Source: Salpingoeca rosetta (lineage: Eukaryota; Protista; Choanoflagellata). From it: a DNA stretch of 64,000 bases. Below, in pieces: positions 11,628 to 52,068 of the stretch. Below the pieces are notes generated by a model that saw nothing but the letters and a program-made list of their open reading frames with translations, did not search any database and was not told the origin of the DNA. Numbering within the stretch: the stretch's first letter is position 1; each line of letters opens with the position of its first letter. The position numbers and the translations under genes were made by a program. The stretch lies in the NCBI GenBank assembly GCA_033442325.1, contig JAWQFM010000029.1, forward strand, positions 648,847 through 712,846, in the 5' to 3' direction.

Positions 11628-14600
11628 ATGAGCGCCTCCAACCACTGCCTCCACACCACGCTTAGTGTTGCTGCGGTGCTCCTCGTTGCGTTTGCCGCCT
11701 CGTCCCAAGCCATCGTCAACGACGTCCGTTTCTCCTGGGTGGCGTTGCTGATGGATATGAGTCTGAGGTTGGGAGGAGTTTGGTACTGGTTGGTTGGTGT
11801 GTGTGTGTGTGTGTGTGTGTGTGTTGCTTGTACCTTTACCCTGTCCCTGCCTGTCCTCCTTCCGTACGCACTTGCTCATTCCCCTCACTCCCCCCCCCCC
11901 CTCTCTGTGTCTGCTTCCCTTCCGATTACTGCCACACGCAGGGCATCAACCTGGGAGATGAGCTCACCCTCTCCGAGTTCCTCGCCGAAGCGGTTCGTGA
12001 GGCAGCACTCTTCGAGGCTTCGTGTCTCTTCTGGTTGTGCTGTGTTGTGCGTATTTATGTGGTTGTGGTTCATCTGATCGCATTCCATCAAAGACTCCCT
12101 CCACAAAGCACCTCTCCTTATCCCTCCTACACACACCACCTGATCCAAAGGCTGAATCCACCTTATCACTCACACCAGCACGCTTGCCTATGCCATCCTG
12201 CCGTTGAATTGCCTTGCGCACACGACAGAACCTGGATGGCTGCGCCAACCTGACTGCGTCCTCGGAGGGCTACTACTTCCAAGGCGGCCACGAGACTGGC
12301 GTGCTCCAGGCCCGCTGCGAAGTTGGTGCGTTGGTTGAAGCCAGAGCACAGAAGAGCGCACAGAAGAGCGAGGTGGGAGTCATGCTGTTGGTTGGGTTGC
12401 GTGATAGGCTGAGCGAGAAACACGAAAGCCGTTGCCTGGTAGCTGGCTTGGATGGTGTGTCAGGGGGCACGCCCAGTTCAGTTGTGCAGTTGGCGAGCCG
12501 GCGCCTAGCCTGCTGGCTAGCCATCTGGGTGTGGTCTTGTAGGTCTTGTGGTTGTACCCCTTTCATCGCGATCATCACAACCATCATCACTATCCTCACC
12601 AACACACTGCCCCACCCATGTTACATCCAACCCCACCCACCCGCGTGTGTGTTTACTTTTTGCAGGTGGCGAGTGCATGTGTACCAACTTCAACGAATGC
12701 GACAACGGAAGTACGTTGACCAGTGCGTGTGTGTGTGGGTGTGGGTGTGTGTACTCGTGTGCGTGTGGATATCTTCCGTCTCTGTCTTCCCCCTTTTTCC
12801 ACTCACCACAAAACCACCCTGTCCTCGCCAACTCACGCCCTTCATTGCGCATGTGCATCTTTCCATCTTACAACGCCTGCCAGACTGCCAGAAGATCTTC
12901 CGCTGCAACGATACAGAGACTGAAGGCTGCTTTGCTGTCGCAAACTGCACCCAGGCCACATTTGACACCTACTTTGCTGTGCGTTCCGCGCATTGTGTGT
13001 ATTATGTGTGTGTGTGTGCGTGCGTGCGTGCGTGCGTGTGTATTATGTGTGTGCGCGTGCGTGCGTGCATAGGGGCGTGATATGACACCGTCGTATTGTC
13101 CACATGACTCTGTTATTGTCTCCACGGCACCTTGTTTGCCTGCAAGCACAGCCCATTGAGCCATTGTTGATTAGTTTCTTTATGTTTCCTCGCCGCGTGT
13201 GCCCGTATCTACCCCCCCCGGGCCACATCACGTTGCCTTCCATCAGGTTGAACTTGACTGCTCGCGTGGCGATCCGCTGACAGAGCGCAATGAGGAGGAG
13301 CTCGACTTCTTTGCCATGCGCTGGAAGCAGGCCCTCGAGGACGACTGCGAAATCTCCAGGGTATGTGTGCGCACATGTGTGTGTGTGTGTTGAGTGCGTT
13401 TAGTGCATGTACGTGTGGTTGGATGCTTGCATGCAGACACGCTACACTGCATGCACCGACAGACCAATCCAACCCATTCAACTGCACGTCAGCTTTCGCT
13501 CACCTGTTTCCAACACCCACGCATGCAGCTGTGCCGGTACAAGGGCGACACATCTGCCACGATTGACGTGATCAACGCCACATCGTTCCGCACCAGCGCC
13601 CTCAACAGCGCACATGTCGACGACCTGCTTGTGTGCGCGCAGTCCACAACCTTCCGCTTCAACCGCTGCACCGTCGTGGATGTGCGTGAGGTGGACGCAC
13701 CAACCACCACCACAACTACAACCACAACGACGACGACGACAACGACGACGACGACAACAACCACCACGACCACCACCACAACAACGACAACAACGACAAC
13801 GACAACAACCTCCACGACTACAACTACCCTTCCTCCTTGTGACTACACGTGCGATGACAACGTCTACAGCTGCCTTGGCGCGGTAAGTCACAGCACGTGA
13901 ATGGTTGGGTGCGTGGTGTGGTGTGTGGCCTGTGCTGGCTGCACAGTGCACACCCCAGTTGTGTGCACATTTTGTTCGTGTATGGCATTCACGCACGCAT
14001 GCTCGCACTGCACTCGCACTTACACACACACATGCACACACACTCACTCACTCTCTCACTCACACACACACACACTCTCACACACTCAACACTCATAAAT
14101 AAACCCCCTCCCCCTCACTTCACCACACAAACCAGGCCATGTTTGAGAACAACGTGCGCGACACGTTCTCTGAGTGCGTTGCGTCCTACGAGCACCACAG
14201 CACCTCTGGCCTGGTTGACTTTGGCATCTGCCTCGCAGACTGCGAGCAGGTCATGCCCAGTGACAACTACACCGACGTCAAGGTCATCCTCGCTTGCTAG
14301 TGAGTCGAAACGCCCTGATCGGGTCGAAGCGCAATGCTCAATGCAACTTGTCTGATGTGTTTCTGCGCTTGTGCGTCTATCACGGAGGATTATTGTTCCC
14401 ACTCCTGCGTGCTTGCGTGTGCTCCCGCTCCGCGTTTGCCCCAACCAGTCAACAGTCGCGTTTGAATATCCCATTTCTTGCGTCCCCACTAACCACGAGG
14501 GATGCCAATTGCATTTCCAATGTCGTTCCCAACAGCCGCTCCTGTGCGCTGTCAACGGCGGATATGGATTGCAACGTCACTGCGACAACCACGCCCACGA

Positions 14601-14995
14601 CCACGATCACGATCACCACCACAGCCGACTGCACGAACGACGGCTACGAGCCCAACGACAACCCGGAAGGCCCTGGTGCCACCACAGTCACTGCACCCGT
14701 CAACCTCAACGCCACCATCTGCCCAGGCGATGCCGATTGGTACAAGTTTGACGTGTGCGGCGGCGGCAACGCGACCATCAACGCCTACTTTACCCATGCC
14801 GAAGTTGACATTGGGGTTGCAGTGTATGACTCCATTGGATATCCTGCTGATGGCTCTGACGGCAGCACGGACACCGAGTACGTGTTTATCCAGAACGGTG
14901 TCAACGCGACCTACTTCTACGCGGCTTTGGACAGCAACCAAGAGGAGCAGTTTGGCGATTACCAGCTCACCATCTCCGTTGACTGCCCCGCCTAA
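11628..14995 (+). CDS. Secreted Cys-rich glycoprotein with poly-Thr mucin-like stalks and a C-terminal PPC (pre-peptidase C-terminal)-like domain; copy 1
   Basis: Signal peptide MSASNHCLHTTLSVAAVLLVAFAASSQA. About 9 exons with Cys-rich segments and N-x-S/T sites, and a poly-T run at ~13703-13828. The terminal domain reads YEPNDNP...ICPGDADWYKF...EYVFIQN...GDYQLTISVDCPA*. No TM segment seen. Confidence 0.8.
11700..14580 (+). repeat. Left arm of ~2.9-kb inverted duplication (partner ~49130-52068)
   Basis: Exons and introns match the reverse complement of the right arm. The match is near-identical from ~11860-14348 versus ~51860-49353, and many ORF-track translations appear twice on opposite strands. 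Confidence 0.95.
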
Positions 14996-51600: not shown

Positions 51601-52068
51601 AGGGAGTCTTTGATGGAATGCGATCAGATGAACCAACCATCCCTTGACACCACAACTACATAAATACGCACAACACAGCACAACCAGAAGAGACACGAAG
51701 CCTCGAAGAGTTGTGCCTCACGAACCGTTTCGGCGAGGAACTCGGAGAGGGTGAGCTCATCTCCCAGGTTGATGCCCTGCAAGTGGCAGTAATCGGAAGG
51801 GAAGCAGACGCAGAGAGGGGGGGGGGGTGAGGGGAATGAGCAAGTGCGTACGGAAGGTGCGAACGCGCGAGGACAGGCAGGGACAGGGTAAGGGCTGGGT
51901 ACAAACAACAAACAAACACACACACACACACACACACCTACACACACACACACACACACACACACACACACACACACCACCACACAACCACCAAGAACAA
52001 AATCCCCCTCCTAATCCACAACAACCACAATCAGTGAAAACGGAAGGCGTTGATATGGCTTGGGGCGA
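48681..52068 (-). CDS. Copy 2 of the secreted Cys/Thr-rich PPC-tip protein; 5' end lost in the assembly gap
   Basis: Same exon series as 11628-14995 in reverse orientation, with a different terminal domain: YEPNDSPPD...ICTDDEDWFNF...GDYQLTVTADCPA*. Confidence 0.8.
49130..52068 (-). repeat. Right arm of the inverted duplication (partner ~11700-14580)
   Basis: Reverse-complement match including introns. Confidence 0.95.

What the first reader, a model, noticed from the sequence alone, without database searches (positions are those of the whole stretch)
11628..52068. Convergent inverted paralogs with constant bodies and variable tips bracket ~34 kb: candidate flip-flop (inversion) switch for a secreted surface protein
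Seen: two copies of a secreted mucin-like gene point toward each other. About 2.5 kb (~11860-14348 vs ~51860-49353) is nearly identical even in introns. Identity then falls off, and the terminal PPC-like domains match at only roughly half of residues by eye. Both variable tips lie inside the interval bounded by the identical arms. Inference: one crossover between the arms would invert the segment (DUF2827x3, REase-kinase, CTH, POLR1B, LRR) and exchange the C-terminal domains between the two promoters. This is the logic of bacterial invertible tail-fibre/hsdS loci and yeast flip-flop mating-type inversion. Old divergence of the tips with intron-level identity of the bodies suggests recent or recurrent exchange. 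No dedicated recombinase is visible.
Basis: partly seen in the sequence, partly recalled or inferred. Interest (0 to 1): 0.85.

Follow-up and report, generated by a model that had tools for sequence, protein, structure and literature searches.

The report
Inverted gene pair homogenised by conversion
Two convergent copies of a secreted glycoprotein gene in the choanoflagellate Salpingoeca rosetta share a 2.5-kb stretch that was recently copied from one to the other, which is ordinary gene conversion between old duplicates; nothing seen here shows a DNA-flipping switch, although none of the available data could have detected one.

Summary
Two convergent paralogs lie about 35 kb apart in Salpingoeca rosetta. 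They share an inverted 2.5-kb core (11840-14348 vs 51887-49351) that differs at 1.8% of sites, about equally in exons and introns. Their C-terminal PPC/collagen-binding-like domains are only 52% identical, and both tips lie inside the arms.

RNA reads confirm a spliced nine-exon left gene of 495 aa: signal peptide, Cys-rich body, two poly-Thr stalks and a PPC tip. The right copy is intact from exon 2 to the stop. Its exon 1 is cut by the N gap.

Divergence rises in steps away from the core: 0.018, then about 0.25-0.36, then dS 0.75-1.1, then unalignable. This is the signature of an old whole-gene inverted duplication overwritten by interlocus gene conversion.

No evidence for a switch was found. 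There is no recombinase and only one assembly. No right-copy letters appeared in about 30 informative RNA reads, which could mean either a silent site or a weakly expressed paralog.

Orientation could not be tested, because the DNA runs are held only as short contigs. The first-stage scan flagged similar inverted pairs elsewhere in this genome, but none has been checked.

Verdict: a new member of a known kind, of low to moderate interest.

The parts
11628..14995 (+). Left gene CDS, 9 coding exons (11628-11723, 11942-11992, 12229-12325, 12666-12722, 12884-12978, 13247-13360, 13529-13882, 14136-14299, 14536-14995), 495 aa. Layout: signal peptide, Cys-rich body, poly-Thr stalk, Cys-rich piece, second Thr-rich linker, PPC-like tip.
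   Evidence: Seven GT..AG joints in RNA contigs and raw reads. The two remaining introns (12723-12883, 13361-13528) were inferred from frame and splice consensus. The frame is open throughout.
11200..11398 (+). 3' part of the left gene's 5'UTR exon. A 5'UTR intron follows at 11399-11591. The RNA contig runs at least 546 nt further upstream.
   Evidence: Joint 11397/8 to 11591/2 and record 1 of run X17.
11840..14348 (+). Left arm: high-identity core running from intron 1 to 50 nt into intron 8.
   Evidence: 45 substitutions in 2489 aligned sites; exons K=0.016, introns K=0.019.
49351..51887 (-). Right arm: inverted counterpart of the core.
   Evidence: Right-copy letters appear in an independent DNA run at a depth like the left copy's (72.8 of 153.1 at 13128-13180).
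48681..51776 (-). Right gene, exons 2-9 (51776-51726, 51472-51376, 51043-50987, 50807-50713, 50444-50331, 50164-49817, 49563-49400, 49173-48681), 472 aa. The frame is open and all splice sites are canonical.
   Evidence: The public annotation calls a 473-aa product across 48681-52248.
52069..52168 (.). 100-N scaffold gap that removes most of the right copy's exon 1. It is the only unsequenced junction in the structure.
14627..14992 (+). Left variable tip: PPC / collagen-binding-domain-like beta sandwich.
   Evidence: A profile of the tip and its relatives hits the ColG tandem collagen-binding domain at E=1.7e-13. The AlphaFold model has pLDDT 91. TM to ColG/ColH collagen-binding domains is 0.70-0.79.
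48684..49046 (-). Right variable tip: PPC-like domain, 52% identical to the left tip.
   Evidence: Pfam PPC E=3.8e-5, 24.9 bits against a cut-off of 25.9. BLASTP 62/119. It keeps all four columns that are invariant across the 22-sequence family alignment.
14996..48680 (.). Interior block that a crossover would invert.
   Evidence: Pfam hits; called genes.
10985..11020 (+). Short upstream patch conserved with 52369-52403 in inverted orientation. It indicates that the original duplication included the 5' region.
   Evidence: blastn 83% over 36 nt, E=9e-4; alignment.

Best explanation
The locus is an old inverted duplication of a whole gene for a secreted, mucin-stalked protein with a PPC tip. 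A 2.5-kb segment, from intron 1 to intron 8, was recently overwritten by interlocus (ectopic) gene conversion between the two copies.

**How it arose (inferred).** A break in one arm was repaired from the other arm by homologous recombination. This copied exons and introns alike. Earlier events of the same kind reached further out and left shoulders of intermediate divergence. The distal half of the PPC exon, the 3'UTR and the 5' end have escaped conversion longest. The result is two proteins with 98% identical bodies and 52% identical binding modules.

**Shown:** the arms, the gene models, splicing, the divergence strata, the PPC fold, and two copies in independent DNA.

**Inferred:** conversion as the process, selection keeping the tips apart, and the absence of programmed switching. 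Occasional crossovers that invert the block are possible as a passive by-product.
For: - **Neutral sites are homogenised.** Intron K=0.019 and exon K=0.016 inside the core. Outside it, distal intron 8 has K=0.25, the exon 1 / proximal intron 1 stretch K=0.32 and the tip dS=0.83-0.94, and the 3'UTR cannot be aligned.
- **Tract ends are sharp and lie inside introns**, not at exon or domain borders.
- **There is a stepwise 3' gradient.** Exon-9 head dS 0.36, PPC first half 0.75, second half 1.13.
- **Differences inside the core are clustered.** The longest run without a difference is 423 nt, permutation P=0.01.
- **Homology continues beyond the core on both sides.** This covers the exon 1 tail, an upstream patch and exon 9 to the shared DCPA stop, so whole genes were duplicated long ago.
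- **Both tips look functional.** They keep the family-invariant residues and pairwise dN/dS is about 0.4.
- **Both arm versions are real.** An independent DNA run holds both at similar depth.
- **The structure is contiguous.** Everything from the left flank to the end of the right arm lies in one gap-free stretch.
Against: - Gene conversion and crossover come from the same recombination intermediates, so repeated conversion makes past or ongoing inversion plausible rather than excluding it.
- The orientation of the block could not be examined in any second assembly or in long reads.
- The strata rest on small site counts (9-17 fourfold sites each) and on gapped intron alignments.
- A recent copy-and-paste of exons 2-8 by another route would look the same.
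Confidence: 0.7

Rival explanations
1. Passive recurrent inversion. The 2.5-kb arms serve as substrates for non-allelic homologous recombination, so the 35-kb block flips now and then over evolutionary or population time and swaps the tips. There is no dedicated machinery and no regulated function. This is compatible with the best explanation and extends it.
For: - The arm length (2.5 kb, 98%) and spacer (35 kb) lie within the range of human inverted-repeat-mediated polymorphic inversions: 5.1-226 kb with repeats of 1.6-24 kb, many of them recurrent (PMC3961182).
- There is evidence of repeated exchange between the arms.
- The interior genes carry their own promoters, so a flip should be nearly neutral.
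Against: - There is no direct observation of a second orientation.
- 1.8% divergence suggests that exchange is not frequent.
- The laboratory cultures probably derive from a single isolate (my own knowledge, not checked with the tools), so polymorphism may not be observable there.
Confidence: 0.2
2. Programmed flip-flop switch. Inversion moves alternative PPC tips between an active left expression site and a silent right site, changing the binding module that the cell secretes.
For: - The geometry is right: the tips are internal and the arms include the 5' body.
- At the exon diagnostics covered (12912, 14279, 14285), none of the roughly 30 RNA reads carried right-copy letters, and RNA contigs of another study show only left letters.
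- Both tips are conserved as functional domains.
- Yeast flip/flop loci have similar dimensions. [quoted passage not shown]
Against: - No recombinase or nuclease candidate was tied to the arms.
- The arms differ by 1.8% and about 10 indels. I would expect an actively flipping repeat to be kept closer to identical, but that is my expectation and was not checked.
- In the RNA reads no right-tip-like letters reached the listing threshold in the first part of exon 9, so no mixed population was detected at that low depth.
- The locus lies more than 200 kb from either scaffold end, so no telomere-type silencing context is visible.
- The RNA evidence is thin, and the 95% likeness filter may have dropped right-copy reads at 14279/14285.
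- The right promoter and exon 1 are unsequenced.
Confidence: 0.04
3. Assembly or scaffolding artefact. On this reading, the arms or their high identity come from misassigned reads, a collapsed repeat or a wrong scaffold join at the gap.
For: - The N gap lies exactly at the outer edge of the right arm.
- Only one assembly is on record.
- Short-read contigs of an independent run are mosaics of the two copies.
Against: - The two arms differ at 45 sites and 10 indels.
- An independent DNA run holds both versions, at 72.8 and 80.3 depth where they are resolved, and roughly double depth where they collapse.
- Each tip is contiguous with its own arm and with unique interior sequence, without gaps.
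- The left arm is contiguous with its tip in DNA contigs, and with its upstream exons and its tip in RNA contigs.
Confidence: 0.03

Closest known systems
Interlocus (ectopic) gene conversion between inverted segmental duplicates, including arm-to-arm conversion in sex-chromosome palindromes (PMC3790853, PMC8327919 as listed)
   Same: The paralogs are in inverted orientation. A tract is homogenised in neutral and coding sites alike, the flanks are older, and the tract ends bear no relation to exon structure.
   Different: The setting is a choanoflagellate. The tract is a 2.5-kb internal piece of a gene, so the outcome is a 'constant body, variable binding tip' pair rather than identical gene copies.
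Yeast flip/flop mating-type switching (type FF1: Ogataea polymorpha, Ascoidea rubescens; PMC6692504)
   Same: Kilobase-sized inverted repeats include the 5' end of a gene and flank tens of kb. The alternative coding information lies just inside each repeat, so recombination would exchange it between two sites.
   Different: In yeast one site is silenced by a centromere or telomere, and both orientations are seen among strains or after induction. Neither is shown here. Here the products are secreted proteins, not cell-type regulators.
[quoted passage not shown] FLNA-EMD (PMC3961182; bioRxiv 10.1101/2020.04.20.051185)
   Same: The repeat length and spacer size fall in the same range. The mechanism is passive homologous recombination without a dedicated enzyme.
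   Different: Those inversions are documented in both orientations, whereas this one is only predicted. Here the breakpoints lie inside genes, so a flip would recombine the coding sequences.
Bacterial and phage invertible tail-fibre and hsdS/shufflon loci (own knowledge)
   Same: They follow the logic of a constant 5' part joined to alternative 3' parts by inversion.
   Different: Those use a neighbouring site-specific recombinase acting on short sites of tens of bp. Here the arms are 2.5 kb of general homology and no recombinase was found.

Membership tests
Interlocus gene conversion tract between paralogs | Divergence inside the tract is far lower than in flanking homologous sequence | tested here: met
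   K=0.018 in the core, against 0.25-0.32 in the shoulders and dS 0.83-0.94 in the tip.
Interlocus gene conversion tract between paralogs | Neutral sites (introns) are homogenised as much as coding sites | tested here: met
   Introns 30/1563 and exons 15/926 differing sites.
Interlocus gene conversion tract between paralogs | Patchwork or heterogeneity of differences, indicating more than one event | tested here: met
   Longest identical run 423 nt, P=0.01; variance of spacing P=0.004; stepwise strata. Site counts are small.
Yeast-type flip/flop inversion switch | Inverted repeats flank the region, with alternative cassettes just inside them | tested here: met
Yeast-type flip/flop inversion switch | One site is expressed and the other repressed (centromere or telomere context) | tested here: inconclusive
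   About 30 informative RNA reads carry no right-copy letters, but depth is low and the 95% filter may bias the count. The locus is more than 200 kb from the scaffold ends. The right promoter lies beyond an N gap.
Yeast-type flip/flop inversion switch | Both orientations are observed among cells, strains or conditions | not testable with these tools
Only one assembly is on record. DNA runs are held as short contigs that break or become mosaic in the arms.
Bacterial site-specific invertible segment (Hin/Gin/shufflon type) | A dedicated serine or tyrosine recombinase gene lies next to short inverted sites | tested here: not met
   No recombinase family was found among 24 large ORFs scanned against Pfam. 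The arms are 2.5 kb, not short sites. Not every ORF was scanned.
PPC / collagen-binding-domain fold (Pfam PF04151) | Match to the Pfam model above its gathering score | tested here: not met
   Right tip 24.9 bits against a cut-off of 25.9; the left tip has no hit. However, 19 of the 22 sequences in the tip alignment (the right tip and 18 of the 20 relatives) match PPC.
PPC / collagen-binding-domain fold (Pfam PF04151) | Profile and fold similarity to solved PPC / collagen-binding domains | tested here: met
   The profile hits ColG at E=1.7e-13. The model has pLDDT 91. Foldseek gives probability 1.0 and TM 0.70-0.79 to ColG/ColH collagen-binding domains and the B. anthracis PPC domain.

The most novel reading that the evidence does not exclude
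The pair is a eukaryotic 'expression site plus silent cassette' device. The left promoter is active and the right one silent. Homologous recombination within the 2.5-kb arms flips the 35-kb block in a fraction of cells and changes which PPC binding module the choanoflagellate secretes on its mucin-like stalk. This would be a flip-flop antigenic or adhesive variation system in the closest living relatives of animals.
Probability: 0.05. Interest if true: 0.8.

Novelty: new member of a known kind. Interest (0 to 1): 0.3.

Why it matters
As it stands, this is a clean and well-delimited example of gene conversion shaping a 'constant body, variable binding tip' pair of secreted proteins in a choanoflagellate. 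It is useful for understanding how extracellular protein families diversify in the sister group of animals, and as a caution for paralog dating in this genome.

It would matter far more if the block really inverts, because programmed or frequent inversion that swaps protein modules has, as far as I know, not been described in holozoans. By my own knowledge, S. rosetta is clonal, culturable and genetically tractable, so the test is cheap.

Tried and rejected
**Searches that found nothing**
- The annotated full-length proteins and further paralogs were sought with a stop-free ORF spanning two real exons and with the right tip ORF. Both searches returned nothing. The spliced proteins have no reference and were not typed in, so paralogs and orthologs of the body remain unsearched.
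- Body exons have no Pfam hit even at E<=1 and no usable Atlas lead.
- No paper on inversion or gene conversion in choanoflagellates was found.

**Search that only placed the domain family**
- The exhaustive search with the left tip found 1966 proteins (E<=0.001). The listed top hits are long proteins with several repeats each, up to 55, at 25-37% identity (too early). This places the domain family, not the gene.

**Independent assemblies**
- The exact-protein look-up first failed because I trimmed the wrong end of a minus-strand ORF. Repeated correctly, it found only the window's own assembly.

**Possible recombinant signals that did not hold up**
- Loose ends at 11556, 13302, 13910, 14557 and 14616 were checked as possible recombinant junctions. 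Four of their consensus sequences were searched in the window and none occurs there, so they come from other loci. Those at 11556 and 13910 sit at CA-rich low-complexity sequence.
- A DNA 'joint' from 11572 to 14596 rests on 21 letters at a CA repeat and was dismissed.
- The mosaic left/right letters in the DNA contigs of run X2 were considered as recombinants. They were rejected because de Bruijn contigs switch paralogs wherever 31 or more nt are shared.

**Readings rejected**
- Haplotype artefact: rejected. The tips are 52% identical, and each tip's inner flank is a different gene (DUF2827 on the left, LRR on the right).
- Recent whole-gene duplication: rejected. Tip dS is about 0.9 against 0.018 in the core.

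Full report
**Source and setting.** The window comes from Salpingoeca rosetta. It lies on scaffold GL832981.1 of assembly GCA_000188695.1, more than 200 kb from either end of a 927-kb scaffold. G+C is 53-60% throughout, with no compositional break at the arms.

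**Checking the observation.**
- A self-comparison gives one long inverted match, 11797-14622 against 51935-49078. It is 93.2% identical over 2906 columns, including 128 gap columns (blocks of 91-99%).
- In a global alignment the core 11840-14350 has 45 substitutions in 2489 aligned sites (1.8%) and about ten indels, most of them in (GT)n or (ACN)n runs.
- Identity drops abruptly at 14348/49351 and at about 11840/51887.
- The only N run in the window is 52069-52168, at the outer edge of the right arm.

**Gene models.**
- RNA contigs and stranded raw RNA reads laid on 11200-15600 gave seven GT..AG joints in this gene, one of them in the 5'UTR, plus coverage of the exons on the plus-strand RNA.
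- With two further introns inferred from frame and splice consensus, the left gene has nine coding exons and encodes 495 aa. These comprise a signal peptide, a Cys-rich body, a run of about 45 Thr, a second Cys-rich piece, a Thr-rich linker and a C-terminal domain.
- The plus-strand signal ends near 15170, where the minus-strand signal of the DUF2827 neighbour begins.
- Projected onto the right copy, exons 2-9 are all open and have canonical splice sites, giving 472 aa. The public annotation aa across 48681-52248.
- The gap removes the right copy's exon 1. The 24 nt that remain carry a 1-nt indel and TT where the left copy has the GT donor.
- The bodies differ at six residues plus a two-residue gap in the poly-Thr run. 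The tips are 52% identical.

**What the tip is.**
- Pfam PPC just misses its cut-off on the right tip (24.9 against 25.9 bits) and does not hit the left tip.
- An exhaustive search with the left tip finds 1966 proteins (E<=0.001); the listed top hits are long and carry several repeats each.
- In an alignment of the two tips with 20 such repeats, 19 of the 22 sequences match PPC.
- The profile of that alignment hits the clostridial collagenase collagen-binding domains at E=1.7e-13.
- The AlphaFold model (pLDDT 91) is an eight-stranded beta sandwich. Its TM to the ColG/ColH collagen-binding domains and a solved PPC domain is 0.70-0.79.
- Both tips keep every invariant column of the family, and their pairwise dN/dS is about 0.4. 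Both therefore look like working binding modules.
- The body has no recognisable family.

**Age structure.**
- Inside the core, introns (K=0.019) are as similar as exons (K=0.016).
- Outside it, divergence rises in steps. Distal intron 8 has K=0.25, the exon-9 head dS 0.36, the first half of the PPC domain dS 0.75 and the second half dS 1.13. The 3'UTR cannot be aligned.
- On the 5' side, the stretch covering the exon 1 tail and proximal intron 1 has K=0.32. A 36-nt patch about 640 nt upstream of the left ATG still matches the right flank in inverted orientation.
- Differences inside the core are clustered. The longest identical run is 423 nt, P=0.01.
- The whole gene, including its upstream region, was therefore duplicated long ago. 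Its middle has been overwritten recently, and probably more than once.
- An independent DNA run carries the right-copy letters at every diagnostic site listed. Where the two versions are resolved, their depths are 72.8 and 80.3. This argues for exactly two real copies and against an assembly artefact.

**Interpretation.** The pattern is the standard signature of interlocus gene conversion between inverted paralogs. All of these would keep their own promoters. Because the bodies are 98% identical, a flip would change the phenotype only if the two promoters behave differently.

**Evidence bearing on a switch.**
- *Expression asymmetry.* At exon diagnostics 12912, 14279 and 14285, none of about 30 RNA reads from two samples carried right-copy letters. 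RNA contigs from another study also show only left letters. This is a necessary condition for a switch. However, depth is low, the 95% likeness filter may have rejected right-copy reads near 14279, and a weakly or conditionally expressed paralog explains it equally well.
- *No mixed population.* No right-tip-like letters reached the listing threshold at the start of exon 9 in the RNA, and none of the four loose-end consensus sequences searched occurs anywhere in the window.
- *No enzyme.* No recombinase family appeared among the ORFs scanned.
- *No second orientation on record.* Only one assembly exists in the collection. All DNA runs are held as short contigs that break or become mosaic within the arms. 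Homologous inversion creates no new junction sequence, so short data could not show it in any case.

**Comparison with known systems.**
- In working logic, the closest match is the yeast flip/flop mating-type switch. There, kilobase inverted repeats, in one species including the 5' end of a gene, flank tens of kb and exchange cassettes between an expressed and a repressed site (PMC6692504). Two of its defining features, a repressed site and observed alternation, are unshown here.
- In likely nature, the closest match is gene conversion between segmental duplicates, together with passive inversions mediated by inverted repeats. In humans these span 5.1-226 kb with repeats of 1.6-24 kb, and many are recurrent (PMC3961182).
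- Bacterial invertible segments differ in needing a site-specific recombinase and short sites.

**Other notes from the scan.** First-stage notes on this genome list many other partial-identity paralog pairs, including another inverted pair bracketing about 32 kb. These notes are unchecked. If they are right, they point to a genome-wide recombination habit rather than a dedicated device at this locus.

**Verdict.**
- It is best explained as an old inverted gene pair homogenised by recent gene conversion (confidence about 0.7).
- Passive occasional inversion is plausible (0.2).
- A programmed switch is unlikely on present evidence (about 0.05), but long reads or four-junction PCR would test it cheaply.

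Noticed in passing
window 14348-14995 vs 49351-48681: Divergence between the copies rises stepwise toward the 3' end: 0.018, 0.25, 0.36, 0.75, then 1.13. Within the PPC domain the N-terminal half is about 69% identical and the C-terminal half about 35%. The two central strands (residues 62-77 of the 122-residue tip) share 1 identity in 11.
   Followed up: partly
window 10985-11020 and 52369-52403: A short inverted conserved patch lies upstream of both copies (83% over 36 nt), within or near the left copy's 5'UTR exon. It may be a shared promoter or UTR element.
   Followed up: partly
window 11879-12717 and 14093-14411 (contigs of run X2): Short-read DNA contigs of an independent run alternate between left-copy and right-copy letters along the arm. 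The simplest explanation is an assembly-graph artefact, but raw reads could check it for real mosaic alleles.
   Followed up: no
window 11556-11640 and 13910-14007: Reads on both strands, in both DNA and RNA, have loose ends here. The one flank sequence searched (at 13910) is absent from the window. These CA-rich stretches are shared with other, more highly expressed loci.
   Followed up: partly
window 15022-15462: Near 15170 the plus-strand RNA signal of the left gene gives way to the minus-strand signal of the DUF2827-repeat gene, so the two transcripts converge there. An unstranded RNA contig merges them up to 15377.
   Followed up: no
window 16886-17106 vs 24607-24828; 22626-22810; 54011-54197: There is a 92% direct repeat inside the DUF2827-repeat gene, and two short-period tandem arrays.
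   Followed up: no
window 11399-14535 (introns of the left gene): The introns are rich in (GT)n and (CA)n runs. The outer edge of the high-identity core coincides with a (GT)n run in intron 1 of both copies.
   Followed up: no
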